Shown here: positions 1 through 62,394 of the stretch, piece after piece
Layout: every line of letters begins with the position of its first letter
Position numbering within the stretch: position 1 is the stretch's first letter
Assembly: GCF_006345805.1 (NCBI RefSeq)
Contig: NC_042997.1
Span: 83,390,001-83,454,000, forward strand
Source: Octopus sinensis
Lineage: Eukaryota
Length of the DNA: 64,000 nt
Direction of reading: 5' to 3'
The notes under the pieces: model-generated
What the model was told of the DNA's origin: nothing
The model's input: only the letters and a program-made list of their open reading frames with translations
Database searches by the model: none
Position numbers and translations under genes: made by a program

Positions 1-1289
1 CAACCACATGATCTTGAGCTCAATCCCACTGTATAGCACTTTGAGTAAGTGTTTTCTACAGCCTGAAATGTTGGTGGATGGGAAGTGTACAGAAGCCTGT
101 GTGTATATAGGCATTTGTGTGTATATACATACAATGTGTGTGAATGTATATATATATATATATATATAATATATATATATATATATAATATATGCATGTA
201 AGTGTGCATGCATGTATATGTATGTGTTTGTCTCCACATGCCTTCACATTGGTACCATTTGGACAGTTGCACCATTTACTTATAATTTGTTCAAAGAACA
301 TGTCCAGCAGCTCAAGCAATTCAACATGTTAAGACCAACAGAATAGAGTACCTTACTTGAAAATCAAGTAAACTTTGGCATCAAGGTCATTCAGCTACAA
401 AGGAATGTCACAACCCATGCCAACATGGAAAATGTGAACATAAAAACAATGATGATGTTGATGATAAAGTAAATTCATAACAAAGTAAATGTCAGCTTAA
501 ACAGCAATAAAATAAATGTTCTACTTTTTAAGGGTCAATTTCATGAATGGCAATATTTTTTTTGTTTTTTTTTATTAAAATCTAAAAATCAATATTTTGA
601 GAGAAGTGAAGATGCCTTCTTTGCTAGCTGGTAATAGGATCAATATTTTCACTGAATGAAACAAAACGTAAATAAATACATAAGCCTCACTCTAGTGATG
701 ATATACTCATTAACTTATATTGATTGTCAGGTAAGAACATTGTTATTGGCAAATAATGAATATATTTTCATAAATATCTTTGGGCAGCTGTCATTATTTA
801 ATGATTTTGTTTGCGATTTTGAAATTTTTTTAATTATTTCCATTTTTTCTCTCAGACATTGACATAAGTCCACATAGGCCTGGACTTGAATAAAAGAATA
901 TATCTTCTTAACAGAAGTTGTGTAGAATAATGTTATGAACATGATAATGGTAATATTAATGAGTTCAGGACTAAAGAATTGATTTCCAGAGCACATAAGA
1001 AGCAACTGCTTGGTAATCTACATTAATTTTCAAGTTATTTATAGCTTGTTTTTAATGTTTGCCCTGAATAATGGCATGACTAAATATCTTTTATTTTGTT
1101 TTGTTTTTAACTTCAAAATAGCTAATATAAATACCAGTAATGTGTTGAGAATTAGATCATCTGATAGCATTCCTTTATAGAGTATGACTGAGTCGTAATG
1201 TTAAAATGATCGTTATTATTGTCAATGTTGGAAGAATCAATAGAGCTGCCTAATAGTAATTAGCAGCATCCTTTTATCTATTTCTCCTT

Positions 1290-1512
1290 TAGTTTTTACT
1301 TCTTTCAGTCATTGGACTGTGGCCATGCTGGGGCACCACCATCAAGAGCATACTCAAACAAATTAACCCTATTATGTATTTTTTTTTAAAGTTAGGTGCA
1401 TATTCAACTGGTCTCTTTTGCCAAGCTGGTAACTCACAGGCATGTAAACAAACCATCAACAGTTTTCAAGTGGAGAGAGAAGGGAGCAAACAAGCACAAA
1501 GAGACACACACA
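1290..1512 (-). mobile_element. SINE family A, 3' half
   Basis: tttcagtcattggactgtggccatgctggggcacc similarity to 1651-2069. Confidence 0.8.
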
Positions 1513-1650
1513 CATAACAACATATATATATATAAAAAAACATAACAATATATATATATACTAGCAGAGATACCCGACATTACCCATGTTACATGCAATT
1601 GAAGAATTAGACTTTTCTGTTATATTTTCTGTAATGAACTGGAATACCTA

Positions 1651-1853
1651 TACTCTTTACTTTTACTCTTTTACTTCTTTCAGTCATTTTGACTGCGGCC
1701 ATGCTGGAGCACCGCCTTTAGTCGAGCAAATCGACCCCGGGACTTATTCTTTGTAAGCCCAGTACTTATTCTATCGGTCTCTTTTGCCGAACCGCTAAGT
1801 AACAGGGACGTAAACACACCAGCATCGGTTGTCAAGCAATGCTAGGGGGACAA

Positions 1854-1904
<51 letters not shown>

Positions 1905-2069
1905 TACGACAGGCTTCTTTCAGTTTCCGTCTACCAAATCCACTCACAAGGCATTGGTCGGCCCGGGGTTATAGCAGAAGACACTTGCCCAAGATGCCAC
2001 ACAGTGGGACTGAGCCCGGGATCATGTGGTTGGTTAGCAAGCTACTTACCACACAGCCACTCCTACGCC
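1651..2069 (-). mobile_element. SINE family A (tRNA head, CORE-like ttgggcaagt segment, internal microsatellite, (tcttttac)n-type tail), near full length and young
   Basis: Head gtggctgtgtggtaag...cagtcccactgtgtggcatcttgggcaagtgtcttc; tail ggcggtgctccagcatggccgcagtcaaaatgactgaaa. More than 20 related copies in the window. Confidence 0.9.
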
Positions 2070-3571
2070 TATGTTTTGAATTTCATCAAAATTGCAGATG
2101 AGGGTTATTGTAATCATGCTACATGTATCCCATACTACTGATTTTTATGCACATATTCTAAAATTCCAGTCTTATAGAACCTGTTAAAAGGATTTTACTC
2201 CTGAAAAATGGAGGACATGGAGCTCTAAAAATGTGAGAATTAAGGCACCTATTGGGAGTGGGTGTCTTAATGTCAACCAGAGAAGCTGAATTGTTGAGAA
2301 TCTTTTTAACTTGGGTCTTATATCTATTGTTCGAATTTCTTTGAAATAGGAAATATATGTTCACTGGGTTTGTAAAAGAGAGCAAAGCTACAGGAAACCA
2401 ATAAACGAATGATCACAATAAGCAGTCAGCTACCCTACCCTAGTAATTACCACTCCCAATGTAGGATTCTTCACCATCCAGGTGACAGGCACAGCTGTAA
2501 GATGCATTATGAATCTATAGCAATTGGAAGGGCGTGACCCAACTGAAATAAACATTAAAAACTGTGTGACGTGAAGGCTAAGGAGAAATGAAAGAGTTAC
2601 CTCTGGAGTTTGCTAATGACCACTATACTGATACGTAACTGGGCAGAATAAATTTACAACCTATAAATGTCTTTGAATAACCAGTCACTCATCTGGGAAG
2701 GCCTTGAAATCAATGTTACCATCTGGGGACTACGTGAGACCCAGTGATAATAAAAAGATTGAAAGGAGGTCTGCAACCAAATAACTTTACTCAACACTTT
2801 GCAACTGAATCAGTGGAGGCAAAGATGTCTCTCATTTATTTGACAATTTATGCACCACATTGCAGAAATCACAATCTAAGTACATGTCAAAGCAAACTCT
2901 TACACTGTTGTACCATTGAATTACAAATAATGCTCATCTTTTATGCTCGGGTGACCCTACAGCTTCCAAGAGTACAACTGTATTCATCTTTGCTTAGATA
3001 AAATGACTAAATTGTGGGTGTTAAGTCCCTATGAAGGGGTCTTTCTAACTTGTAAGAAGATGAAATTTTATAAATATTACTTCATTTGTGTCTAATATCT
3101 ATGGTTAAAATTTCATCAACAGCAAAAATATATGAATTGTCATGGGGGTTATGACATTCCAAATTTTGTAATGATCCATTCAGTACTTTTGACTTAGTTT
3201 TGGATCATAAAAGGTGAAATGGAAACTTTGAGAATACTTCTGATATGTGTCAATTACCTATGATTGAAATTTCACCAACATCGAAAATTTATGAATTTTC
3301 AAGGGGGTTCTGCCCCCTCTAAGCCATCTGAAATTCAAACCAAACATATTGCATTATACCTGCCCTTATGCATTGAATCTAAGTTTCAAATATCATAAGG
3401 ATCCATTCAGTAATTTTGGTTCATGAAATTGTATGAAACATACAGCATTACCCTTCTCCCTAGGCTTGGATTTAGTGTTCCAAATTTCATTATGATTGGT
3501 GCAGCAGTTTTTGAATGTATAAGACATTGACTTTAATATAACAGAAATGAATATGCACATATACATACATG

Positions 3572-3602
<31 letters not shown>

Positions 3603-3765
3603 ATTATATATACACACACACAAAGATAAATTGATAGATACAACTGAGTGGGCAAACAAAAATATGAGACACAGCCTAGTGATTTTTTTTATGTTGATAA
3701 GCCGGGTACTTATTCTATTAGTTTCCTCTTGTGAAACCAGTAAGTTATGGGGATGTAAATAAATG

Positions 3766-3819
<54 letters not shown>

Positions 3820-3820
<1 letters not shown>

Positions 3821-4295
3821 CATCATCATCATCATTTAACATCTGCTTTCCATGCTAGCATGGGTTGGACGATTTGACTGAGGTTTGACAAACCAGACTC
3901 CAATCTGATCTGGCAGAGCTTCTACAGCTGGATGCCCTTCCACTCCGAGAGTGCAAACCACTCCAAGAGTGTAGTGGGTACTTTTACGTGCTACCAGCAC
4001 GAGGGCCAGTTTGGTGGTACTGGCAACGGCCATGCCCAAATAGTGCTTTTTACGTGCCACCTGCACAGGAGCCAGTCCAGCGGCACTGGCGATGACCTCA
4101 CTCAAATGTATCACGTGTCACCAGCACAAGTGCTAGTAAGGTGACGCGGTAACGAGCACGCTCGAATGGTGTGCTTAAATGTGCCATCGGCATGAAGGCC
4201 AGCTTGTGGCTCTGGCAACGATCTCACTTTTATGGTACTCTTAGCGCTCCACTAGCAATGGATGCCAGTCATCGAGTTTGATTTCGACTTTGATT
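3820..4295 (-). mobile_element. Repeat family C ((GAT)n-tailed non-LTR-type repeat with internal cttttacgtgccacc-like units)
   Basis: (cat)n ttaacatctgctttccatgctagcatgggttggacg. Related copies at about 33830-34085, 42415-42555, 44640-44845, 50510-50700, 52358-52732 and 53860-53985. Confidence 0.75.
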
Positions 4296-4423
4296 TCAAA
4301 AAAAAGAAATCATTGTTCTAAAGCATAATGATACTAACCAATGGTTCAAGAACTGGTCTATCTTCAATGAAAGCTGCAGGGAGGTCATCTTCTGGTTGCT
4401 CTTTGCCTTCCAAAAGATTAGTC

Positions 4424-4470
<47 letters not shown>

Positions 4471-4551
4471 TGTGTGTATATATATATATATATATGTACA
4501 TGTGTGTATATATATATATATGTACATGTGTGTATATATATATATATGTAC

Positions 4552-4588
<37 letters not shown>
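4424..4588. repeat. Compound (TA)n / tgtacatgtgtg minisatellite
   Basis: Four tgtacatgtgtg units embedded in (TA)n. Confidence 0.95.
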
Positions 4589-4591
<3 letters not shown>

Positions 4592-4753
4592 TGGTTGTAT
4601 AAAGTCAACATAACGTGACAGTCCCGTAGAGGGAATTACACCAATGTTATATAGCCCTAGGAAGCATTGACGCTTCCTGTTGGCTTTGACACATTCCTGT
4701 GTCCGTATATTTGCAAGGGGGAGGCAAGCACCCCCACCAGCTAGAACTAGCAA

Positions 4754-4799
4754 CCTGGAGACATGCATGTTTCTGGGTCTTGTCCGTCGTCAGTCCAGG
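4754..4799 (-). ncRNA. Type I hammerhead ribozyme motif (stem II imperfect)
   Basis: cctgga CTGACGA cggacaagaccca GAA ACATGCATGT C tccagg: 6-bp stem I, palindromic stem III, GUC cleavage triplet. Confidence 0.7.
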
Positions 4800-5354
4800 G
4801 TAGCGTGTCCTCGCTAGCGGTGACACTTACCAAGCCCTCGCAAATATATCTATTTACAGTGAAATTTATTCACTGGTCACCGTAATTAGAAATATTGAAT
4901 TTCTAAATGTCTCAACGAGACATGAGCGGTGGTGGAGCGATAGAGTGGTTGTGTGAAGTCAGCATAACCGCGAAAACTAGCAGCCATGAAGGGGCGCCTC
5001 TCATCTCTTGGAGAAGGAATACTTAGTTGTAGGTATAAGAAACCTAATTGAGGGAGAGATATGTTGCAGATTTAGGGGAGATGCGTGAGCCAAATTTATC
5101 GTAGACATCAATAAGCAATAGGAACTATAGAATTATATATATATTTAACATGAGACGTGAGGCTGAAATAGACAGAGTCAAACAGAATAGAGATAAACTA
5201 AAAAGGTTAATCAATTGCGCAGAAATATTACTAGGTAGTTAACGGGTTGAATTTAAAGGAATGCTTATCAGTGGTTCAATATATATATGTACATGTATAT
5301 ATGTATAAACATATATGTGTGTGTGTAAATATTTATATATGTATATATATGCAT

Positions 5355-5459
<105 letters not shown>

Positions 5460-5509
5460 ATGTGTATATATCTATATGTGTGTGTGTGTATGTATGTATG
5501 TATGTATCT

Positions 5510-5670
5510 ATAGATGACAGACTTCCACTAGATTCCAGGATCCAAATTTACTCACAATGCATTGATTGAAACAAGGCTCTAGCAAAAAAAACACTTCCCA
5601 AGGCACCATGCATGGAGATTGAACCCAAAACTGAGTGCTTTCCAAGTATGCTTCTTAACCACACACCCAT
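5510..5670 (-). mobile_element. SINE family A, head half
   Basis: acacttcccaaggcaccatgcatggagattgaaccc...cttaaccacac. Confidence 0.75.
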
Positions 5671-6769
5671 GCATTTATATCCCAAGTACAAACCACACAC
5701 ATAGATAGACTGAAGCTTTCATCCTATTTAACTAACACCCAGCACCTGCCATCTCCACATGCAACAGAAAGGAAAAGTGGAACCCTGTGCCAGTGCTAGA
5801 AATAACTCAGTAAACTCATTTTGAACCTTTGTAACATGAATCAACAAATTTATTGCCAGTTCAAGCTTACAATGGAATTTTTTCTGATGTATGTTAAATA
5901 ACTCCAGTTTTCAACATGACAAGATAATGGTTTGAAATTTACACTTATTTATAACTACTTCATAACATAAAATACATACATAAATAAAATAGTTTTAACT
6001 ACGTAAATTTTAAAAGGTTACATTTGGCTAGAGAATATATCATAGCAAATAAATGGCATTCAATAATTATTAGAGCAACTAAATAGTAAAATGTTGGTAA
6101 ACTGATGCTATAACATGCCATGTACAATTTTCTTTTCACAATAACAGACCAGACTCTTCCAAGTCAGATACTCTAATTAGTAGGATATTGTCAAACTGAA
6201 AGACTCAGGCAGGAAAAATTCAATTGACTGATCACTTTTGACAGGCTGAGCATTTGGTGATGTAGCTTTATACACCAGACTACAAATGAAAATCAGTATA
6301 CAATGTAGTAATTGAACCCTTTATGACTGGAGTGAAACTGACTGAAACTAAAGACAGCCCCCAAATATAGATTGCTCACCCTATTTGAACATCTCTAACA
6401 GATGAAAACTAGACAAACCCTTTCATGCATTTTGTTAACTGTTATAGCATTCCACCACATCCTTTTATTAAAGTCTGCTGTCTCAAAAGCTCTAGAAATC
6501 CCAATACACACTTTGGTCTGAGCATTTGGTGATTTAGACCTTTACATCAGGTGGATGGGTGTCAGATTCAACAGAACTTTGAAAACAAAATATATTATGA
6601 TACAGAGAAAACAATGGTGCCTGTTGTGGCCCCTGACCATACCAGCTCTGGTCAAACCATCCAGCCAATATGAGCATGGAAAATGGATGTTAAATGATGA
6701 TGATAGCTTCAAATCTCTTATAAATTGCACTAATTTACAAGAAAGAACTTCAAATTCCTTTGGCTGCCA

Positions 6770-6993
6770 ACCCTTTTGGTACCAACCCACCTGAGACCAC
6801 CCTTGGTTCTGTGATACAAACTTCTCATCTTAAAATGATCTAAATGAAAATCTTCCATCAAAATTTCATAATTTATATTCCAAAACACAAGCTTAATAAG
6901 AACACAATTATTTTAATAAATTCTTTATTGGTTTCAAAATTAATTGAAACAAAGGCAGAGCATTTCAACAGAAATATGGTAACAAAAGTGTTA
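6770..6993. mobile_element. Second piggyBac-like MITE family (cccttttg...aacaaaagggttaa ends)
   Basis: Related copies at 19822-20376 (interrupted) and about 52027-52190 (reverse). Confidence 0.6.
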
Positions 6994-7367
6994 AGTAGAC
7001 AAGATAATGTGGGTATGATATTAGTTCATCACAGATAATACTCAAAGTAGGTTTGATAGCTCTTTCCTCAACAAGGTAAATTGGATTCAGTAAAGTTAAG
7101 TGCTATGTTTGAAAACAAATATAATCATAGTCCCACTACTTCCAAGTGTTGGCAGCATAATCTCCCTACTACCTAAGCCATTCTATTTCCAAACAAGCAG
7201 TCCAATTCATAGATGTGTGAGAAATGAATTTAATACTTAATATGGTATAATACTATTTGTGCCAGACAAGTGAAAGTAGATCACTCAACATGCTAGATCA
7301 AACAGTCAAATTACCTTTAAATACCACCCTACTATTTTAAAGATGAGATCTAAGACTGAACAACATA

Positions 7368-7588
7368 TTGGTTTTAAATTTCGGCACAATGCCAGCAATT
7401 TCAAGGACGGGGCTAAGTCATATTAAATCAACCCCAGTGCTCAACTGGTACTTATTTTATCAATTCTGAAAGGACGAAAAGCCAAGTTGACCCCAACGGC
7501 ATATGAAGCCAGAAAGTAAAGATAGACAAAATGGCACTAAGTATTTTGCCCAGCATGCTAATGATTCTGCCAGCTCACTGCCTTCATT
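7368..7588 (-). mobile_element. SINE family B (tRNA head plus Deu/Nin-like central domain)
   Basis: Minus strand resembles ggcgagctggcagaatcgttagca...gagttcaaatt..gccgaggtcgactttgcctttcatcc...gataaaataagtacc. Confidence 0.75.
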
Positions 7589-7889
7589 CAACAACAAAAT
7601 ATTAAAAATTACACAATGTCTGAAAATAAAAGAAAAGACGATCATATGTGAAAAGCTTTTGGTCATAAGTCTTCTCAACTAAGGTTAACTTGAGACTAAA
7701 CAAAAAACAACAACAATGAAATATGCTTGCAAAATATACCAAGTGAACATATTTGTGTGTGTGTTTTAAGTGACTTTCTATGCTTCAACACCATATGATT
7801 TCACTTGCCAAATAAAGCATAATTCTGGTACACATAAAAACAGTATACTGGTAATCCTGAAGAGAAAGAAAATATTCAAAACATCTTAC

Positions 7890-8011
7890 TTGTTTGCAAA
7901 TGTGGTGATGACCTTCTGCATACATTTCCGAATGCTAATAATGAACCCATCATGAAGGCTAAGAGGGCGATACCAACTCAATACATAATCTCGTATTAAA
8001 TAATCAAGCAC
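7890..8011 (-). CDS. SNX13: SNX13 coding exon 4 (VLDYLIRDYVLSWYRPLSLHDGFIISIRKCMQKVITTFAN+AA), PXA domain; gene continues left of window
   Basis: Acceptor tttgtttttcattcacag|, donor AA|gtaaga. 122 nt. RDYV..WY..LS....F...IR...Q.....FA PXA signature. Confidence 0.95.
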
Positions 8012-8802
8012 CTGTGAATGAAAAACAAATTATGAGTGTGTGCTGCATGTGCATCTGTATATGTTGATGTGTGCTTACATCAGTGCCTACATGCCTGTCA
8101 TATTGATTTCAAATTTTGGCACAGCAATTTGGGGATTGAGGTAAGTTGATTACTGTAAAAACCCATGTAAATTGTGCACCTATGTAATTTACACAGGTAA
8201 TTTTCATGATAAAATTTAAGAAAAGCTTCTACTCATGTAAAATTCACACCTAAAAGTTTTCAGAATTGCCAATATTGCCAGGGGAAAAAGGTTTTCAGTT
8301 TAGTTGTATTTAGCATAATTTCACTTATGATAAGATTTTATTAAATTTTCATTAAATACGAATAATTTCTGTTTAACAGGTATCACATTGAAAGCTATTA
8401 AATTACAAAGTATTTGTGTTGTTTATAATAAACTTTATTTTACATTTCTTTCCCACAAGAGATTATGTCCGATCTTTAGCATATTGATGTATGTCTTCTC
8501 AAATCACGATCACAGGAAAAGTTGTTGATAAGAATTACCAACAAAAACAAAGCTGATAAATATATGCACAGGTGTTGCAAATTAGTTACCAACAAACATC
8601 AGCTTGAATGACACTTTATTTGACTGACAGAAGGTGACCGATCAAACTGATTATGTAAACAGAACTCTTTTCCTCCTATTCTTATCAGAACCTTTGATAC
8701 AGAGTACTGAAATTTTAATCCCTTTCACATTTATAAAATGTCAAGCAAACTTTAAAATTTGTCATTACCATTATTGTCAGTATGAGCAGAACTTATGAAT
8801 CA

Positions 8803-9185: not shown

Positions 9186-9603
9186 TTTACTATAAAGGAG
9201 AAATTAAATATGTTGAAAATGCATTTGAATGTGGCAATAGAACCAATGTTCGAAACAGCAGAAAACATTTTTACATGCATACTTATGTATATATGAATGC
9301 TTACATAAATGCATAAAGTTCATGTGCTCAAGAGCTAACAAAGCAGAAGATATGCATAAACACACACAATAACTATTATTGTAATCATTTGTCATAACTC
9401 TTATGATTCTCTTTTAAGCACACAAACTTTTATACCATATTATTATTAGATATCCAGATTTGCATGCATTATTAATGAATTCTCATTAAAGTGTGCAATT
9501 TTTCCATTTACGTATTCTGCTGACAATCACAAAACTTTCACCAGTTGTATAATTTTGAATAATCGAATAAAACAAAAAGGAAAAAAGGGTTTGTACTACT
9601 TAC

Positions 9604-9693
9604 TTCTTGCAATGCTTCATCAATTACACTAGCTCCAGTCATTCTGCGATCAAAATTGCGATACCTGCCGGTATTTTGCATTATGTTTTTTAC
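9604..9693 (-). CDS. SNX13: SNX13 coding exon 3 (VKNIMQNTGRYRNFDRRMTGASVIDEALQE), PXA domain start
   Basis: Acceptor ttttctctgcattctag|, donor GAA|gtaagt. 90 nt, phase 0/0. FDRRMTGASVIDEALQE matches SNX13 IDRRLTGANIIDEPLQQ. Confidence 0.95.
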
Positions 9694-9844: not shown

Positions 9845-10082
9845 ACTGATTCTAACGGTCTCTTTTTGCCAAACTACTAAGTTATTTATGTGGGGCGGGG
9901 GACACAAAAGACACACAGAAATACACACACATAGGTGCTCCTTTCAATTTTCATCAACCAAATCCACTCTCAAAACTTTGGTTGGTCTGGAGCTATAGTA
10001 GAAGACACATCCCAAGGTGTCATGCAGTGGGACTGAACCCAGAATCATGTAGCTAGAAAGCAAACTTCTTACTACACAGCCT
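9845..10082 (-). mobile_element. SINE family A copy
   Basis: ggtctctttttgcc...aaatccactc...gggactgaacccagaatcatgt. Confidence 0.8.
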
Positions 10083-10109: not shown

Positions 10110-10182
10110 AGTCCTCAGTAGGGATTGAACTCACAATCCCTGGTTTACAAGGCCAGTGCTCTAACCACTGAGCTAATGTAAG
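10110..10182 (-). pseudogene. tRNA-Thr(UGU)-like pseudogene/fragment
   Basis: Minus strand reads TAGCTCAGTGGTTAGAGCACTGGCCTTGTAAACCAGGGATTGTGAGTTCAATCCCTACTGAGGAC, with D arm and CT-TGT-AA anticodon loop. The 5' acceptor strand does not pair and the T and anticodon stems have mismatches. Confidence 0.8.
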
Positions 10183-11511: not shown

Positions 11512-12046
11512 CATCTTTTACTTGTTTCAGTCATTTGCCTGTGGCCATGCTGGGGCTCCGCCTTGAAGGGTTTATTAGTTGAACAAATCAACTCCAGGAC
11601 TTATTTTTTATGCCTTGTACTTATTCTATCAGTCTCTTTTTGCCAAACCAGTAAGTTACAGGGATGTAAACACACTACTCAGCTGACAAAAATGAGTTAT
11701 ACCAGTATTTCAAAGGGTCAGCCTTGTCACAGCCCGTGTCACACTGAATCTCCCTGAGAACTACATTAAGGGTATGTGTATCTGTGGAGTGCTCAGCCAC
11801 TTTCACATTAATTTCATGAGCAGGCTGTTCTATTGACTGAATCAACTGGAACTCTCTTTGGCATAACCAATGGAGTTCCAACGTGTGTGAATGTGTGTGT
11901 ATATATGATGGGCTTCTTTCAGTTCCCATCTACCAGATCCACTCACAAGGCTTTGGTTAGCTCAAAGCTATAGTTGAAGACACTTGACCAAGATGTCACA
12001 CAGTCAGACTGAACCCAGAACTGTGTGATTGGGACACAAGCTTTTA
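11512..12046 (-). mobile_element. SINE family A copy with another repeat nested at about 11705-11878
   Basis: 3' half at 11512-11700 and head at 11900-12046 flank an unrelated segment also seen at about 43740-43850. Confidence 0.75.
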
Positions 12047-17758: not shown

Positions 17759-18423
17759 CCCCACCCATCCCAGCATGGAAGGTGGACATTAAACGAAGAT
17801 ATATGTATGTATGTATGTATACATACATACACAAAGTATGTATACATACATACACACAAACATATAACAAACTTCTTTCAGTTTCTGTCTACCAAATCTA
17901 CTCAAGGCTTTAGTCAGCCTGGTGATATTGACAGAAGATCCTTGCCCAGGGTATCATGCAAGGTGACTGAATCTAGGAACATGTGGTTGGGAAGCAAACT
18001 TCTTACTACACAGCCACACCTGCACCTATGTAAGAAAAGAATTTTTTTTCTATTTATGTATTTAAAACATTTAAGGGATGTGAAATAGCTAGTTTTAATA
18101 GCAGAACTCAAAGCAGATAACACTATAAATAACAGCATGAAGAATATTAGGTTGAAGAGTTCCTGGATAGAAAAAATGTCAAAGGTAGACTTCTACATGT
18201 TACTATTTATAACTTTATTTCAAGTTTCATTGATGTAACAAGTTAATTCATATCTTTTACTTTTTAAGAGAAGACAATTTTTAAGAAATGTTTAAAAATC
18301 AAATGGTTGCCTTACAATGGAAAAGCAACAACATTCATGAATTTTATTTACAACTGAAGGAAAAAAATTGACTAAATATTCAAGAATTACTTCTTGTTGG
18401 ATAAATATAAGGTATCAACTTAC

Positions 18424-18523
18424 TTTTGTTAGGCCTGGTTCCATGTATTGTAATCTAAAAGGATTCAGTACCAAAATACTCTTGGACATTTCACATCCAT
18501 AATTATAAGCAATAATAAGGAAG
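18424..18523 (-). CDS. SNX13: SNX13 coding exon 2 (FLIIAYNYGCEMSKSILVLNPFRLQYMEPGLTK)
   Basis: Acceptor tttttttctaattacag|, donor AAA|gtaagt. 100 nt, phase 2 to 0, so it joins the flanking exons in frame. Ends PGLTK versus vertebrate PGVPK. Confidence 0.88.
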
Positions 18524-27505: not shown

Positions 27506-27726
27506 GAAGAGCAATTTCCATTTTCTTAGCTTATGTGCCAGTAACAACATTGAGATATATAATGAGGTGCTTCAATGACTGTGCTGATGTTTATACAGCA
27601 TTTCCTTGGTTAATCTGAGTAGTGAAGGATGAGGGTTGTCATCTGACAACTGTGCACATTCTCTGACCAACTATTCTTTGTGTTATTAACAACAATAATA
27701 ACATATGGTTTCAAATATTCGCAAAG

Positions 27727-29033
27727 TGCTCAACTGCTCAACCACTCAAATGTGGAAGTCATATATCTCGACTTCGCAAAGGCCTTCGATAAAGTCGATC
27801 ATGGAATGATATGTCACAAACTGCGTGATCTTGGCATAGTTGGAAAACTAGGAGAATGGCTTCACGACTTTCTGAAAAATAGAAGTCAGGTGGTAGTAGC
27901 CAATGGGGCCACTTCCATTAGCACGCAAATAGTGAGCGGTGTTCCACAGGGCACTGTTTTGGGACCACTACTGTTCATAATGGCCCTCTCAGACATGCCC
28001 TCAGCCACGCGGAGAGCCACGATCACAAGTTATGCAGATGATACAAAAGTTTCACAGGTAATACAGAACCCTGAAGACACTAGGCACCTGCAATATGAGC
28101 TGGACGAAATTTACAAGTGGGCTGAAAAGAATAGCATGCAGTTCAATGCTGAAAAGTTTCAAGCTTTATACTATCAGCATGCAAAACTGAATGCAATACC
28201 CAAGGAATACACTGGACCCGGAGGGATTGCAATCCCAGAGGCACAATCAGTGCGTGACCTGGGTATTCACATGAGTGATGACGCGACCTTTCATGTACAT
28301 GTTGCTAAACTGACAGTGAAATGCAGACGCCTGGCTGGATGGATTCTTAGAACCTTTAGAACAAGAGAACAGGAAACCATGATGGTCCTCTGGAAGACAC
28401 TTGTCCTAAGTCACTTTGACTATTGCTCTCAGCTATGGTCACCATCCAGTGTCAAGTTGATCACAGAACTTGAGGCGATCCAACGAAGCTACACGAAGAA
28501 GATAGCCTCTATGCAGAATGTAAGCTACTGGGAAAGACTCAAGAGATTAAAATTATATTCCCTGGAGCGTAGGCGGGAAAGATATGCCATAATATACATC
28601 TGGAAGATCCTGGAGGGAAGCGTCCTGAACTTTGGCATCGAGAGTTACGCAAACGCCAGAACTGGGCGCCACTGCGTGGTGCCTAGGACTCCAAACTTGC
28701 CATCAAGATGTAGGACAAGATTCTGTGATAGCCTAGGCTTCCGAGGCCCACAGCTCTTCAATATCCTCCCGATGAACCTGAGAGACCTGCATGGGGTGGA
28801 TGCAGATGTCTTTAAAATGGAGCTGGATCTCTTCCTGTCAGGTGTCCCAGATGAACCAACTTCACGGCAGGAGGGGCAGATGAGGGCAGCTGCATCGAAC
28901 TCTCTCATGCACCAAATAGCAGTTGCTAGAAAGCCTCCATGAAGTGAAACCAAGTAGCAACACCAAATGGCGGTGCCCCAGCATGGCCACAGCTCATGAG
29001 CTGAAACTGGAATCAATCAATCAATCAATCAAT
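27727..29033 (+). mobile_element. 5'-truncated CR1-group LINE (RT C-terminal half, intact frame, 3' UTR and (AATC)n tail)
   Basis: ORF with LDFAKAFDKVDH, GVPQGTVLGPLLF and YADD motifs, uninterrupted to the stop at 28942. Tail (aatc)n. Candidate TSD caaag at 27722-27726 and 29034-29038. Confidence 0.93.
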
Positions 29034-29949: not shown

Positions 29950-31010
29950 ACAAAAGAATTTTCAGAATGCGATCATCTTTCATTCAAACATATCCAACCC
30001 ATTTGCACTAAATTCCTAACAGGATACTTTTGATACTGGAGAGAGCACATTTTTCTAAAATGTTGACATTTGATATCTTGCCATTTTATGTTGCAGCTAT
30101 TGCACACACAGTACATGTGCAAAGTTTCATAAGGAATCCATGCTTCTACTCTGTATAAAAGTGTGCTCAAAATACAAGATTTGTATACACTTATTTTAAG
30201 TGATACCATATTCATCCCACAAATGGTGAGAAAGTTTTCCAAAAGCACTTGTAATGCTAGATATCTAACATATTTCGTCATCAAAAGTGCTCTTAAAGTT
30301 TACTGTACTTCCAAGATATTTAAATGATATTATGCATTTAAGCAGCTTATTGTCAATCGTCATATCTAAATCTTGAGAATGTTCTGTTCTAAGCTTTGGT
30401 TGGAATAAAACTACAGTTTTCTTGATGCTGATAGTCAGCCTAAATGTACAAGCTGCTGCAGCAAACTTGTCAATTGTGTCCTGAATTTCTTCAAATGTAT
30501 GAGAAATAAAAGGGCAATCATCAACCAACACAAAATCATGTAAAATCTCTTCCTTGGTCTTTTTCTTTGATTTGAAGCTTTGTCCATTTAGGTTTAGTGG
30601 ACGTCCTTCTGTGTGAAACTGGAATTTTACACCTTCGTGGTAATCCATAAAAGTATGTTGGGAGTATCATCAAAAAGAATATGGAAAAAAGTACAGAACT
30701 GAAACACAGTCCTGTTTAGCTGAGTGGCAACAGAAAATGCTTCTAAATATTGACAGTTAGATGCCACTGTTTCCATCATTCCTTCAGACAAAGATACCAT
30801 TAACCTTAACATTTTATCAGGAAGACCAGCTTTTGACAAAATTTTCCAGAGCACCTCACAATTCACTGTATCAAAGGCCTGGGTCAGCATTTTGCTCACA
30901 TACTTTTTCTTGAATTTGTCAAAGGGTAAAAATCATGCCAACTGTGACAGCAAAGGTAGAATCTACAGGAAAAAAGTATCAATCACATTTTGTGAGAGTG
31001 CAGTATGCTA
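29950..31010 (-). mobile_element. Degraded RTE-clade LINE reverse transcriptase remnant
   Basis: Frameshifted segments AFDTVNCEVLWKILSKAGLPDK, LVDDC (decayed YADD), LTISIKKTVVLFQP, FKYLGS. Confidence 0.85.
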
Positions 31011-39300: not shown

Positions 39301-39479
39301 TGAAGTAGCTCTGAATGTAATGAAGATATCCCCAAAAAAACTAAACCTTGCAACTCTGTCTTAACCATACCTACAATCCTGACATAAATTTGAAGTAAGT
39401 TGTAACTTGTCTTTTGATTGTAATTAGAAGAATTGTATGAAAAAATTCTGATAAAGATGTAAAACAAAAATATACTTAC

Positions 39480-39607
39480 CCAAACAAAAATATTGCTACA
39501 ATGAATATTATGTAAAATCCCCTAAGAATTCCGAGAGTACCGAATGTACCTAGGAACAAGGACAAAGCAAGGATCATCCACGAATAGGATCCATCCACCC
39601 AGGGCAT
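39480..39607 (-). CDS. SNX13: Sorting nexin 13, first coding exon (MPWVDGSYSWMILALSLFLGTFGTLGILRGFYIIFIVAIFLFG), TM region
   Basis: Acceptor ttttttcttctcatgttttcag|ATG; donor GG|gtaagt. 128 nt, open frame, ends phase 2. Resembles the vertebrate SNX13 N-terminus (W..L...LFL.TFG). Confidence 0.9.
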
Positions 39608-59778: not shown

Positions 59779-62394
59779 ACGCTCATCAGAGTCAGCCGAT
59801 ATGGAAGGGAATATGGCAACTGCTTTCTATTGATGGGTTGATTAACACAACCGGTCAGCAGTTACTGTGAAAACGTTGGACCAGGGGATTAGTTTAGGCA
59901 TTATGTCACTTAATCGGGTATGCTGTGAAACCAGCAAGAATTATCTTAAAGTTGGAAAAGTGTTTATTATTAATGTGGTGCTCTTGTGAGGATGGAGTGT
60001 GTGGTATGTGTAGCATGTCGTATGTATAATTTTTTCCAGTGTTGTAGGTATGTATAGCTGTGTTCATTGGTTTGTTTTCTTTCTGTAAAGGATAAAGTCA
60101 TGGGAGGGGTATGTTAGCATGCCATGTGTAATGTGTGTGTGTGTGGGGGGTCTACAACCCTAGCCAAGCATGTCTGGACTTTGAAAGAAAATGCCACGGA
60201 GTACAGCATAAAGTAGAAGATCCTAGAAAGATGCAAAGCATACTTCAATTATAGCAGGAAGTGCAGATTATGCCTGGCTGAGAAGAGAGTAATTTTAAAA
60301 GGTACCCAATGCCTGGATGTTTACCTGAATAGCAAGAATGAGGTGTTTAATCTTTGCCCACATGAAAGGAAGTACATTCTATCATACCTGCATGCCCTAC
60401 CATGACTACAACCACAGGTCCCCTGCTTCGACCTTCCATCAATGTCCTAGAGCCCAGCAACAAGAGTTTGACCAAAGCTAGTACCCTTCAACTAGCTTTG
60501 GCCTCTACAGGGAGGACACACTGGTAATATCAAGAGAATGACCACCTGCTAGATAAGCTCAGAAAGGACTTCACAGACACCATGAACTCCCTTGGACTGA
60601 AGGTCACTATAGAGACCAACCTAAAAATAGTGGATTTCTTTAATGTGACCCTAAACTTGGAATCAGGTACCTATAAGCCCATTAGGAAACCAAATGAGAA
60701 GTTGTCTTACATTAACATAGGTTCCTGCCATAGTGTTCCGGAACCTGGTTAAGGGTGTCAACAGGAGAATCTCCAGTTTGTCTTCAAGCAAAGAGATCTT
60801 TGATGCTGCTGCTGCATACTACAACCAGGCCCTGGCTGCTAGTGGTTTCAAGGATAATATTAGTTACATGCCAAACCCTAGCCCCCTGCAAGAGAAAATG
60901 CCACTGGAAAGTACTGTGGTTCACACCGCCTTTCTCTTTAAATGTTAGGACCAGAGCAGGTAAGATCTTAAGTTTAAGTAGTATGGGGAATCTGTACACA
61001 CCTGTACTTGGCTAAGTGAACTATACTAGTTAGTATAAATGAGCATGTGCAAAATAGTCTGGGAAGAGTGTTATATGCGAAGTCTCAAATTATATAGGTT
61101 GTAGGAATTATTGAATAATATCTTGGAGTGCTTGTTGAAGATACACAGTTGGAGAGTAATAAGAGAACATCGGAAACATTTGATATCATAACAGTTCAGA
61201 TATAACAGTGACGACAAGAAGTCATACAACATATCAGTTCAGTTGACAGACACTTCTCTCATACCAACAGCTTCAACAAAATATTTACTAGACATACCCT
61301 GAAATTATCCTTTAACTGTTCACCTACTGTAAAAAAGATAATAGTAGGTAGACCTGAGGCAGGATACTCATGCAGGGTAACACAACTTGTCCACTAAACT
61401 GCCACTGCAATATGGAAACAGTTGTTTATGAGGTAGAAGAAACAGCAACTGGACCCAATGGACAACTGAGCGTGCAGAAGTATGTCGGGGCAATAGAAGG
61501 TCCCTTCAGAACCTGCTTTAATAACCACAAGTCCTCATTCAACATCCCAGAGAAACATAACACCACAACCCTAGCCAAGCACATCTGGACTTTGAAAGAA
61601 AATGCCACGGAGTACAGCATAAAGTAGAAGAACCTAGAAAGGTACAAACCATATTTCAATAGCAGCAGGAAGTGCAGATTATGCCTGGCTGAGAAGAGAG
61701 CAATTTTAAAAGGTACCCAACACCCGGATGTTTACTTGAATAGCAGGAGTGAGGTGTTTAATCCTTGCCCACATGAAAAGAAATACATTCTATTGTACCT
61801 GCATGCCCCACCATGACTGCAACCATGGGTCCCCTGCCTTGACCTTTCAACAATGCTCTTGAGCCCAGCAAAAAGAGTTTGACCAAAGCACACACCAAGG
61901 CACCTATGTACACACATGCACACACTCCTATAAAGCAGACATCCCACAAAATAAACTGTCTCCCCACCACCAACACATAGCCCTTCACACAAATTGTAAC
62001 CCCCACACACACATTACATGCTAAAAGAACCACCACCCTCTGACTTTATCCTTTACAGAAAGAAAACAGACCAACGAACACAGCTATATATACCTACAAC
62101 CCCAGAAAAATTATACATATGACACTGCTGCACATACCACACACTTCATCCACACAAGAGCACCACAATAATATACACTATCCCTACTTCACGAGAACTC
62201 TTGCTGGTTTCACAGCATACCCTACCAAGGGACATAACTCCTAAACTAATCCCCTGGCCCCTTTTTCATTCTATCACCTTGTTCACAGCAACTGTTGATC
62301 GGTTGTGCTAATCCACCTCCGACAATAAAATGCAGTCGCCATACTTCCTTCCATATCAGTTAACTCTGATGAGCGTGAAATTATATAATCAGTT
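59779..62394 (+). mobile_element. Rearranged Penelope-like element: inverted terminal repeat, partial direct repeat, RT C-terminus, GIY-YIG endonuclease, terminal repeat with hammerhead motif
   Basis: FGLYRED, (D)VTLNLESGTYKPIRKPNE and YVGAIEGPFRTCFNNHKSSF motifs. 59779-60155 is the reverse complement of about 62000-62376; 60153-60478 is a direct copy of about 61564-61889. Confidence 0.9.
62362..62394 (+). ncRNA. Minimal type I hammerhead ribozyme motif in the Penelope terminal repeat
   Basis: aact CTGATGA gcgt GAA ATTATATAAT C agtt: 4-bp stem I, palindromic stem III, AUC triplet. Confidence 0.65.

What the first reader, a model, noticed from the sequence alone, without database searches (positions are those of the whole stretch)
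4754..4799. Hammerhead ribozyme motif on the SNX13 sense strand inside an intron
Seen: the minus strand reads cctgga-CTGACGA-cggacaagaccca-GAA-ACATGCATGT-C-tccagg. It has a perfect 6-bp stem I, an intact catalytic core, a GUC site and a 10-nt palindromic stem III. Known: minimal hammerheads with palindromic stem III that act as dimers are typical of Penelope-like retroelements. Inference: because it is co-oriented with SNX13 pre-mRNA, any residual activity would cut the intron co-transcriptionally. Stem II has only about 2 canonical pairs here, so this copy may be dead.
Basis: partly seen in the sequence, partly recalled or inferred. Interest (0 to 1): 0.75.

Follow-up and report, generated by a model that had tools for sequence, protein, structure and literature searches.

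The report
Decayed hammerhead ribozyme relic, octopus intron
An intron of the octopus SNX13 gene carries a single, probably dead copy of a hammerhead self-cleaving RNA motif of the kind that small animal retroelements carry, so it is most likely an ordinary molecular fossil and not a new regulator.

Summary
All conserved hammerhead core bases are present, helix I is a perfect 6 bp, and helix III is a 10-nt palindrome. The host gene is SNX13 of Octopus sinensis, on the minus strand. The motif lies in the sense orientation in the intron after the exon at 8014-7889.

A chance origin is unlikely. I estimate about 1e-4 or fewer such motifs per 64-kb window. The motif also has the layout of the canonical animal type-I hammerhead: UAC just 5' of a 6-bp helix I, a four-position helix II, and a CAAGA loop 2.

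It fails one defining feature. Helix II has only two Watson-Crick pairs, flanked by C.A and A.C mismatches, and the G10.1-C11.1 pair is missing. Rfam hammerhead models do not match it.

The motif caps a roughly 45-bp hairpin inside a GC-richer 330-bp segment. That segment is bounded by 24-nt direct repeats 354 bp apart and sits next to (TA)n microsatellites. There is no second copy in the window, and no relatives could be retrieved.

Best reading: a solo, decayed copy of a retrozyme-like or Penelope-related element, most likely inactive. Low interest.

The parts
4754..4799 (-). Hammerhead-like motif. Helix I 5' strand 4799-4794; core CUGACGA 4793-4787; helix II region CGGACAAGACCCA 4786-4774; G12 A13 A14 4773-4771; helix III palindrome ACAUGCAUGU 4770-4761; C17 4760; helix I 3' strand 4759-4754. 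The predicted scissile bond lies between 4760 and 4759.
   Evidence: Sequence read. It is the only descriptor hit in the window. Chance estimate.
4800..4802 (-). UAC immediately 5' of the 6-bp helix I, at the position of the 5' half of loop 1 in canonical type-I hammerheads. The 3' half is UU at 4753-4752.
   Evidence: Compared by eye with the N79 (Schistosoma-derived) hammerhead printed in PMC12550524.
4706..4848 (-). Imperfect hairpin of about 45 bp, with the hammerhead-like motif at its tip. Helix I continues into closing helices after the small internal loop.
   Evidence: RNA fold MFE -67.9 kcal/mol, z = -4.4, 0 of 200 shuffles as stable. Self reverse-complement BLAST match 4706-4848.
4945..4968 (-). 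Upstream copy of the 24-nt direct repeat, GTTATGCTGACTTCACACAACCAC.
   Evidence: There are only two copies in the window, 21/24 identical, and all differences are C/T transitions.
4591..4614 (-). Downstream copy of the 24-nt direct repeat, GTTATGTTGACTTTATACAACCAC, start-to-start 354 bp from the other. It is either a target-site duplication or the terminal redundancy of a more-than-unit-length copy.
4615..4944 (-). 330-bp body between the direct repeats. It is hairpin-rich, non-coding and 47% G+C, against 35% for the window. This is the presumed inserted element carrying the motif.
   Evidence: GC content. Circular fold of the 354-nt unit gives -121.9 kcal/mol, z = -5.7. No long ORF and no Pfam hit.
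4425..4589 (.). (TA)n microsatellite abutting the downstream direct repeat.
   Evidence: Tandem Repeats Finder.
5279..5511 (.). (TA)n/(TG)n/(TATG)n microsatellite block about 310 bp upstream of the element on the minus strand.
   Evidence: Tandem Repeats Finder.
7889..8014 (-). SNX13 exon (residues 110-151 of O. sinensis isoform X1) directly upstream of the intron that holds the motif. Other exons lie at 9601-9693, 18421-18522 and 39479-39607, all on the minus strand.
   Evidence: tblastn of P0001-P0006 against the window. The proteins are named sorting nexin-13 and carry PXA/RGS/PX/Nexin_C domains.

Best explanation
The motif is a genuine but decayed canonical type-I hammerhead ribozyme. It sits in a single ('solo') copy of a short non-coding retroelement. 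The unit is about 330-354 bp, of the non-LTR retrozyme / Penelope-pLTR-derived kind, and it inserted next to a (TA)n microsatellite in the SNX13 intron that follows the exon at 8014-7889.

The element is transcribed passively as part of the SNX13 pre-mRNA. In that RNA the motif would sit at the tip of a roughly 45-bp hairpin.

Helix II has only two G-C pairs, flanked by C.A and A.C mismatches. The G10.1-C11.1 pair next to the catalytic core is missing. No second copy is nearby to extend helix III by dimerisation. The ribozyme is therefore most likely inactive or nearly so, and has no role in SNX13 expression.

Shown: the sequence anatomy, the strand and intron location, the hairpin, the direct repeats, the compositional island, and the absence of further copies in the window.

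Inferred: the retroelement origin, the loss of helix II by transitions, and the inactivity.
For: - The complete core, a perfect 6-bp helix I and a palindromic helix III are present. It is the only such site in the window. The chance expectation is about 1e-4 per window or less.
These are UAC directly 5' of a 6-bp helix I, a 4-position helix II, a CAAGA loop 2 (against CAAAUA), and closing helices after loop 1.
- Cervera & De la Pena describe this plan (helix I 6 bp, helix II 4 bp, short helix III with a palindromic loop) as typical of metazoan HHRs (PMC4209133).
- All three non-paired positions in the 5-step nesting of helix II are C.A or A.C, each one transition away from a Watson-Crick pair. 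The chance that three mismatches are all of this type is about 0.006. The chance that five nested positions are all paired or A.C is about 0.03. The three differences between the flanking direct repeats are also all transitions.
- The motif lies in a 330-bp, 47% G+C, strongly self-paired segment (z = -5.7). The segment is bounded by 24-nt direct repeats 354 bp apart.
- Metazoan retrozyme units are 150-450 bp, have G+C below 50% and are highly self-paired. They measure about 350-390 bp in a mussel, and they also occur as dispersed monomers (PMC7229834; bioRxiv 10.64898/2026.07.22.740005).
- PLEs are an established TE order in Octopus vulgaris (PMC13282606).
- A cofold of two copies gives the double-hammerhead with a 10-bp helix III as its MFE. 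The monomer hammerhead fold is only -6.1 kcal/mol, against an MFE of -8.9.
Against: - No relative of the element could be found, so membership of a repeat family and covariation in the helices are unproven. The searches were: a self-search of the window; a six-frame ORF search of 5.8 billion proteins; phmmer against 1.84 billion representatives; two metagenome pattern scans; a viral contig scan; and exact-ORF look-ups.
- Rfam hammerhead models give no match, even on a 59-nt query where 10 bits would be listed.
- No RT or GIY-YIG remnant is adjacent.
- The comparison with the canonical loops rests on one printed reference sequence and was made after the fact.
- With the core and helices I and III all intact, it is somewhat odd that every change fell in helix II. 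Ascertainment may explain this, since only copies with an intact core get noticed.
Confidence: 0.6

Rival explanations
1. Chance resemblance. An unrelated hairpin-forming insertion, such as a foldback or MITE-like element, happens to carry CUGANGA...GAAA...palindrome...UC in its 34-nt apical loop. There is no ribozyme ancestry.
For: - The core motif alone occurs at the chance rate in this window.
- Helix I comes for free once a long inverted repeat exists.
- CATG-rich palindromes are common in this microsatellite-rich DNA: ATGCAT occurs 46 times and CATGCATG 5 times.
- Helix II, a defining helix, is not there.
- Rfam gives no match.
- No family members were found.
- With relaxed criteria a 2.7-Gb genome would still hold several to hundreds of chance sites.
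Against: - The joint expectation for core, palindrome and six Watson-Crick helix I pairs is 1e-4 per window or lower, and about 1e-5 with the 10-nt palindrome.
- The extra agreement with the canonical type-I plan is not expected by chance: UAC before a helix I of exactly 6 bp, a 13-nt helix II region with a CAAGA loop, and mismatches that are all A.C.
- Real HHR-bearing elements are numerous in mollusc genomes (PMC7229834), so true copies should far outnumber chance sites.
Confidence: 0.15
2. The motif is still a working, if slow, ribozyme. Helix II forms with protonated A+.C wobble pairs, or the RNA pairs in trans with another copy. It then cuts the SNX13 intron between 4760 and 4759.
For: - All catalytic-core positions, C17, helix I and helix III are intact.
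- The orientation is sense to SNX13.
- Helix III has 3 bp plus a tetraloop. The literature describes a helix III of two pairs plus a tetraloop as the more stable, invertebrate-like form, and a cloned mussel retrozyme repeat self-cleaves co-transcriptionally (PMC7229834).
- The two-copy cofold adopts the double-hammerhead as its MFE.
Against: - Helix II has only 2 Watson-Crick pairs, and G10.1-C11.1 is replaced by C.A. The PLE-HHR paper describes that pair as highly conserved.
- The monomer hammerhead fold is less stable than the competing fold.
- There is no partner copy within 64 kb.
- Even intact PLE-type motifs cleave poorly in vitro (PMC4209133).
- No RNA ends were seen at the site of a PLE hammerhead in Anolis (PMC11167929).
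- Retrozymes are reported as depleted from introns, which fits tolerance of dead copies only.
Confidence: 0.1
3. The element family never had a canonical helix II. It would carry a 'hammerhead core only' motif, like those reported near the 3' ends of some Naiad-type Penelope-like elements. Those elements also prefer (TA)n targets and survive only as old remnants in cephalopods. The motif would then have a non-catalytic role or none.
For: - Craig et al. report PLEs whose 3' regions hold cuganga and gaaa 7-17 nt apart without fitting the stem descriptors, (TA)n insertion bias for Naiads, and only remnants of Naiads in cephalopods (PMC8557442).
- Here the spacer is 13 nt and the element abuts a (TA)n array.
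- A separate PLE-like composite element at 59.8-62.4 kb ends on both sides in CTGATGAGCGT, which is half a hammerhead core.
Against: - Perfect helices I and III, the UAC/CAAGA loops and the A.C-only mismatches point to a once-canonical hammerhead.
- There is no sequence similarity between this element and the PLE-like element in the same window.
- No PLE coding remnant is adjacent.
Confidence: 0.1

Closest known systems
Canonical metazoan type-I hammerhead ribozymes of non-LTR retrozymes and satellite-like repeats (Schistosoma Sm-alpha, newt satellite 2, mussel, coral and axolotl retrozymes)
   Same: - Type-I topology with the open end at helix I.
- A 6-bp helix I preceded by UAC and followed by closing helices.
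- The CUGANGA / GAAA / UC core.
- A 4-position helix II with a CAA(R)A-type loop.
- A short helix III with a palindromic tetraloop that can extend to 10 bp in a dimer.
- A host unit of about 330-354 bp, below 50% G+C and highly self-paired.
   Different: - Helix II has only 2 of 4-5 pairs, and G10.1-C11.1 is C.A.
- It is a single copy and not a tandem array.
- There is no Rfam hit.
- No family members were found, and no circular-RNA evidence is available.
Minimal hammerheads (min-HHRs) of Penelope-like elements (Cervera & De la Pena 2014)
   Same: - The palindromic 15.2-16.2 pair and loop 3.
- Potential to act as a dimer.
- Dispersed single motifs from truncated elements are common.
- PLEs exist in Octopus and favour microsatellite targets.
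   Different: - PLE min-HHRs have a long helix II (6-8 bp), a conserved G10.1-C11.1 pair, an extra nucleotide after A9, a short helix I (4-5 bp) and usually no real helix III.
- Here helix I is 6 bp and extended, helix III has 3 bp plus a loop, and helix II is broken.
- No pLTR, RT or GIY-YIG context is present.
Intronic sense-strand hammerheads of amniotes (Rfam HH9 and HH10; recalled from de la Pena & Garcia-Robles 2010, not re-read here)
   Same: A type-I hammerhead lying in the sense orientation within an intron of a protein-coding gene.
   Different: Those are complete ribozymes conserved across species, and Rfam models exist for them. This motif does not match any Rfam hammerhead model, and its conservation in other octopuses could not be examined.

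Membership tests
Hammerhead ribozyme (any type) | Conserved core: C3 U4 G5 A6 N7 G8 A9, G12 A13 A14, an A15.1-U16.1 pair, and H17 at the cleavage site | tested here: met
   CUGACGA ... GAA-A ... U-C, read directly from the sequence.
Hammerhead ribozyme (any type) | Three helices around the core: helix I | tested here: met
   CCUGGA/UCCAGG gives 6 Watson-Crick pairs, extended by closing helices to about 45 bp.
Hammerhead ribozyme (any type) | Helix II of at least 3-4 pairs, starting with G10.1-C11.1 | tested here: not met
   CGGAC-AAG-ACCCA gives C.A, G-C, G-C, A.C, C.A. That is 2 canonical pairs, and 10.1-11.1 is C.A.
Hammerhead ribozyme (any type) | Helix III closing the core | tested here: met
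   A-U, C-G and A-U plus a UGCA loop as a monomer, or a 10-bp duplex in the two-copy cofold.
Hammerhead ribozyme (any type) | Score at or above the gathering threshold of an Rfam hammerhead covariance model | tested here: not met
   No hammerhead family was listed at the gathering threshold, nor at E<=10 on 251 nt or 59 nt. Caveat: min-HHR-like motifs in metagenome loci were not detected either.
Hammerhead ribozyme (any type) | Site-specific self-cleavage 3' of position 17 | not testable with these tools
   Needs in vitro transcription and cleavage, or RNA end mapping.
Canonical metazoan type-I HHR / non-LTR retrozyme | A 6-bp helix I with an internal loop 1, a 4-bp helix II with loop 2, and conserved loop nucleotides | tested here: inconclusive
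   Present: a 6-bp helix I, UAC 5' of it, UU 3' of it, and a CAAGA loop 2. The printed N79 sequence has UAC and CAAAUA. Helix II is broken. The comparison is with one reference sequence only.
Canonical metazoan type-I HHR / non-LTR retrozyme | Non-coding unit of about 150-450 bp, G+C below 50%, with highly self-paired RNA | tested here: met
   The body is 330 bp, or 354 bp repeat to repeat. G+C is 47%. The circular fold has z = -5.7. No ORF or Pfam hit.
Canonical metazoan type-I HHR / non-LTR retrozyme | Tandem (dimer to multimer) arrangement | tested here: not met
   A single copy with only a 24-nt terminal direct repeat. Solo monomers are described for vertebrate families.
Canonical metazoan type-I HHR / non-LTR retrozyme | Multi-copy family in the genome and expression as circular RNA | not testable with these tools
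   No octopus genome or transcriptome could be searched at the DNA level. Indirect protein-level searches found nothing.
Penelope-like-element min-HHR | Location in a pLTR flanking an RT + GIY-YIG ORF, or in a recognisable truncated PLE | tested here: not met
   No ORF, RT or GIY-YIG signal in 4590-5290 on either strand. No similarity to the PLE-like element at 59.8-62.4 kb.
Penelope-like-element min-HHR | [quoted passage not shown] | tested here: not met
   Helix II has 2 pairs. Reading C4786 as the extra nucleotide leaves an unpaired A4774 before G12. The criteria come from PMC4209133.
Penelope-like-element min-HHR | Palindromic 15.2-16.2 pair and loop 3, allowing a dimeric active form | tested here: met
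   ACAUGCAUGU is palindromic. The dimer cofold MFE is the double hammerhead.
Penelope-like-element min-HHR | A second motif in tandem or within about 50 kb | tested here: not met
   No second motif in the 64-kb window, with up to 3 mismatches or with the descriptor.

The most novel reading that the evidence does not exclude
The hammerhead is conditionally rescued. All three helix II mismatches are A.C, and the motif caps a roughly 45-bp double-stranded hairpin in an animal known (established knowledge, not tested here) for very extensive A-to-I RNA editing. Editing to I.C pairs, or protonated A+.C wobbles, could rebuild a 5-bp helix II. That would make an editing-gated self-cleaving switch inside the SNX13 pre-mRNA.

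Against this:
- Two of the three adenosines follow a G, the least favoured editing context.
- The 10.1-11.1 pair would be C-I, not G-C.
- Nothing shows that the locus is conserved.
Probability: 0.02. Interest if true: 0.85.

Novelty: new member of a known kind. Interest (0 to 1): 0.25.

Why it matters
If the reading is right, this is one more fossil of the hammerhead-bearing short retroelements that populate many invertebrate genomes. It sits in a cephalopod gene intron, and I found no description of such motifs in cephalopods in the searchable literature.

It is a modest data point for two questions. One is how far retrozyme/PLE-type ribozymes spread in molluscs. The other is the idea that only disabled copies are tolerated in the sense orientation inside genes.

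It would matter much more only if the copy cleaved, or were conserved across octopus species. Nothing here suggests either.

Tried and rejected
1. Rfam at gathering and at permissive E-values gave no hammerhead hit. I did not treat this as decisive. The same library also missed min-HHR-like motifs in metagenome loci, and the PLE paper's variants lie outside standard descriptors.

2. I looked for further copies in the window by 3-mismatch pattern, word-7 BLAST and a structural descriptor. There were none.

3. I looked for relatives outside the window, and none gave a relative:
- a chimeric six-frame ORF query of 4596-5282 against 5.8 billion proteins;
- phmmer of the ORF at 4598-4789 against 1.84 billion representatives;
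- exact look-ups of two ORFs;
- a family-specific DNA pattern in metagenome contigs (0 hits);
- a generic CTGANGA-N8-24-GAAACATGCATGTC pattern in metagenomes and in viral contigs (0 hits).
The generic metagenome scan gave 22 heterogeneous hits, mostly without helices. L001/L009/L021 and L016 look hammerhead-like but have no special structure or PLE ORFs.

4. I tried to fetch the orthologous SNX13 intron from other octopus assemblies. The gene spans 121.5 kb, too long for the tool, and the other isoforms are not on record.

5. I looked for PLE coding remnants next to the motif. Translations and Pfam show none.

6. I tried to classify the PLE-like ORFs at 60-62 kb. Pfam gave nothing, there is one unnamed Logan homologue, and the PDB sequence search gave nothing. 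The PLE label for that element rests on my recollection of the protein motifs only.

7. Supplementary sequence files of the PLE papers are not held.

8. I considered a tRNA-derived SINE origin for the element. ARAGORN finds no tRNA in the window, and Rfam finds nothing in the unit.

Full report
**Observation.** On the minus strand, 4799-4754 reads CCUGGA CUGACGA CGGACAAGACCCA GAA ACAUGCAUGU C UCCAGG. Every coordinate and feature in the finding is correct.
- Helix I (4799-4794 with 4759-4754) is six Watson-Crick pairs.
- The conserved positions are all present: C3-A9, G12-A14, the A15.1/U16.1 pair and C17.
- ACAUGCAUGU is a perfect palindrome and occurs once in the window.
- The predicted scissile bond lies between 4760 and 4759.
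- The helix II region offers only two canonical pairs.

**Is it more than chance?** The core alone is not. CUGANGA-N(4-30)-GAAA-N-UH occurs at about ten sites in the window, as expected from shuffles. With structure added, it is. I wrote a descriptor requiring the core, a palindromic block starting at A15.1, H17 and a helix I of at least 4 bp. It finds only this site.

Order-1 and order-4 Markov surrogates of the window give 0.3-0.7 core-plus-palindrome sites per window, and 0.008-0.03 if the palindrome must be at least 10 nt. Six Watson-Crick helix I pairs cost a further factor of 4.2e-4. The expectation is therefore about 1-3e-4 per window, or 3e-6 to 1.4e-5 for the strict form. Over a genome of about 2.7 Gb that is a few sites, or fewer than one. 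I conclude the motif is not a random hit for this window, but a genome-wide scan could turn up a handful of relaxed look-alikes.

**Host gene and strand.** A query made of exon-like ORFs returned sorting nexin-13 of Octopus sinensis, O. vulgaris and O. bimaculoides, with PXA, RGS, PX and Nexin_C domains. tblastn places four exons on the minus strand:
- residues 1-43 at 39607-39479;
- residues 48-81 at 18522-18421;
- residues 81-111 at 9693-9601;
- residues 110-151 at 8014-7889.

The O. sinensis proteins match at 100% in three of these four exons and 97.6% in the fourth, so the window is from that species or a very close relative. The next coding segment is not found in 1-7888. The motif therefore lies in the intron after the exon at 8014-7889, in the sense orientation.

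**Surroundings.** Helix I is only the top of a much longer imperfect hairpin, 4848-4706. It has about 45 bp, an MFE of -67.9 kcal/mol and z = -4.4. After the six pairs comes a small internal loop (UAC at 4802-4800 opposite UU at 4753-4752), followed by closing helices.

The hairpin sits in a 330-bp segment (4944-4615) made of several short perfect hairpins. This segment has 47% G+C, against 35% for the window and 37% for the sequence just upstream. It is bounded by a 24-nt direct repeat, GTTATGYTGACTTYAYACAACCAC, at 4968-4945 and 4614-4591. The two copies are 21/24 identical, all three differences are C/T transitions, and the repeat occurs nowhere else in the window. The copies are 354 bp apart start to start. 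Folded as a circle, the 354-nt unit has z = -5.7.

A (TA)n array (4425-4589) abuts the downstream repeat. A TA/TG array (5279-5511) lies 310 bp upstream. I found no ORF, Pfam domain or RT/GIY-YIG remnant on either strand.

This anatomy is that of a short, non-coding, highly structured insertion. The 24-nt repeat is either a long target-site duplication or a small terminal redundancy, as expected from a more-than-unit-length cDNA. That last point is inference.

Cervera & De la Pena give these traits for that kind (PMC4209133):
- a long helix II (6-8 bp);
- a conserved G10.1-C11.1 pair;
- an extra nucleotide after A9;
- a short helix I;
- a palindromic 15.2-16.2 pair and loop 3;
- genomic families full of covariation.

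Only the palindrome is met here.

The same paper describes the canonical metazoan type-I hammerhead. It has a helix I of 6 bp and a helix II of 4 bp, joined by loop-loop contacts, and a short helix III with a small palindromic loop. I compared the motif with the Schistosoma-derived N79 ribozyme printed in PMC12550524:
- N79: GG-UAC-AUCCAG-CUGAUGA-GUCC-CAAAUA-GGAC-GAAA-...-UC-CUGGAU-UCC
- Octopus: GC-UAC-CCUGGA-CUGACGA-CGGA-CAAGA-CCCA-GAAA-CAUGCAUG-UC-UCCAGG-UU-GC

The two share the UAC directly 5' of a helix I of exactly 6 bp, the four-position helix II, a CAA(R)A loop 2 and closing helices beyond loop 1. The comparison was made after the fact and against a single reference sequence.

Helix III (A-U, C-G, A-U plus UGCA) resembles the invertebrate type described for retrozymes (PMC7229834). 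I therefore file the motif nearer to the canonical type-I hammerheads of non-LTR retrozymes. Those units are 150-450 bp, have G+C below 50% and are highly self-paired. They measure about 350-390 bp in a mussel. Dispersed monomers are reported for vertebrate families, and the elements are themselves thought to derive from PLE pLTRs.

**The defect.** Nested from the core, helix II reads C.A, G-C, G-C, A.C, C.A, with an AAG loop. In the four-position reading it is C.A, G-C, G-C, A.C with a CAAGA loop. The G10.1-C11.1 pair, described as highly conserved even in PLE variants, is absent.

All the mismatches are of the A.C type, each one transition away from a Watson-Crick pair. The chance that three mismatches are all of this type is about 0.006. 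The chance that five nested positions are all paired or A.C is about 0.03. The flanking repeats also differ only by transitions. This fits decay of a once-paired helix II in an insertion old enough to have gathered several percent divergence.

Energetically, the monomer hammerhead fold (-6.1 kcal/mol) loses to an alternative fold (-8.9). Pairing helix II in silico would give -9 to -14 kcal/mol. Two copies cofold into the double hammerhead with a 10-bp helix III, but no second copy exists within the window.

Rfam lists no hammerhead family at the gathering threshold. It also lists none on a 59-nt query where 10 bits would suffice. I give this limited weight, because min-HHR-like motifs in metagenome loci were missed too.

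**Relatives.** None could be obtained. Protein-level proxies found nothing: six-frame ORFs against 5.8 billion proteins, phmmer against 1.84 billion representatives, and exact look-ups. A family-specific DNA pattern had no hit in metagenome contigs.

A generic pattern with the same helix III gave 22 heterogeneous hits, most without helices. A few (L001/L009/L021, L016) are hammerhead-like, but they have no PLE ORFs and no unusual structure. I draw nothing from them.

The orthologous intron in other octopuses could not be fetched, because the gene spans 121.5 kb. Covariation and copy number are the tests that would settle the matter, and they remain undone.

**Mechanism, committed.** My confidence is about 0.6 that this is a solo, decayed copy of a retrozyme-like or PLE-derived element. 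It would be transcribed only as a passenger of the SNX13 intron and fold into a long hairpin. It would be catalytically dead or nearly so, because helix II cannot form and there is no partner for helix III.

The rivals, with rough weights:
- a chance motif on an unrelated hairpin element, about 0.15;
- a still-active slow ribozyme cutting the intron, about 0.1;
- a family that only ever had a 'core-only' motif, like some Naiad PLEs, which also favour (TA)n targets and are old remnants in cephalopods (PMC8557442), about 0.1.

Context from the literature supports the main reading. PLEs are an established TE order in O. vulgaris, with an old expansion (PMC13282606). Retrozymes are reported as depleted from introns, which fits tolerance of a disabled copy. 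Even intact PLE hammerheads cleave poorly in vitro and leave no detectable RNA ends in Anolis.

**Novelty and interest.** This is a new member of a known kind. I found no paper describing hammerheads specifically in cephalopods, but type-I hammerheads in molluscs and other invertebrates are well documented. Interest is low (0.25).

The most novel reading not excluded is an editing- or protonation-rescued helix II in an animal with massive A-to-I editing. I put that at about 2%.

Noticed in passing
window 59779-62376: A composite repeat with three features. Inverted arms of about 320 bp (59779-60100 against 62041-62376, 84-92% complementary) both end outward in CTCTGATGAGCGT, the first half of a hammerhead core. 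A 300-bp direct repeat lies at 60154-60453 and 61565-61864, 1411 bp apart. Plus-strand ORF fragments at 60528-60945 and 61358-61813 look to me, from memory, like the C-terminal part of a Penelope-like element ORF (a GIY-YIG-like 'VVYEVE...YVGAIEG...NHKSSF' and CRLCLAEK). Pfam and PDB sequence searches gave nothing, and only one unnamed Logan homologue (P0007, 69% identity) exists. There is no sequence similarity to the element at 4.6-5.0 kb.
   Followed up: partly
window 27647-28939 (+): A 431-aa open frame of a non-LTR (LINE-type) reverse transcriptase: Pfam RVT_1, E = 1.7e-19. A second RT-like fragment on the minus strand at 30268-30932 gave no Pfam hit.
   Followed up: partly
window 10118-10175 (-): A partial tRNA-like sequence (Rfam tRNA 37.4 bits, model positions 8-63) that ARAGORN does not call as a tRNA gene. 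It is probably the head of a tRNA-derived SINE. It lies next to sequence repeated at 1988-2058 and 10011-10081.
   Followed up: partly
window 4339-4406 (-): An exon-like stretch, [22 protein letters not shown], with an AG just upstream and GTTAGT just downstream. It lies about 190 bp downstream of the element on the SNX13 strand. It is absent from all six annotated Octopus SNX13 isoforms retrieved, so it may be chance or an unannotated alternative exon.
   Followed up: partly
window 1294-1346, 1670-1722, 11516-11568 and many others: Many copies of a short interspersed repeat (core TTTCAGTCATTTGACTGTGGCCATGCTGG), usually followed by ACAT/TA microsatellite tails. Microsatellites of the TA, TG and GA types are very frequent across the whole window.
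   Followed up: no
L001 443-479, L009 572-608, L021 3212-3248 (-), L016 5117-5150 (metagenome contigs): Motifs sharing the helix III GAAACAUGCAUGUC. Three identical copies have an extra nucleotide plus a 6-bp helix II but only a 2-bp helix I. In L016 there is a 6-bp helix I, a G10.1-C11.1 pair and a 13-nt helix II region with one A.C mismatch. All lie in AT-rich, apparently eukaryotic, non-coding contigs. Rfam does not call them, and the local folds are unremarkable.
   Followed up: partly
window 39419-39607 (-): The first SNX13 coding exon matches the O. sinensis proteins at 100% over residues 1-43. The O. vulgaris and O. bimaculoides models align at only about 70-73% over 63 residues that run past the exon end. 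This points to different exon-1 boundaries or annotation in those species.
   Followed up: no
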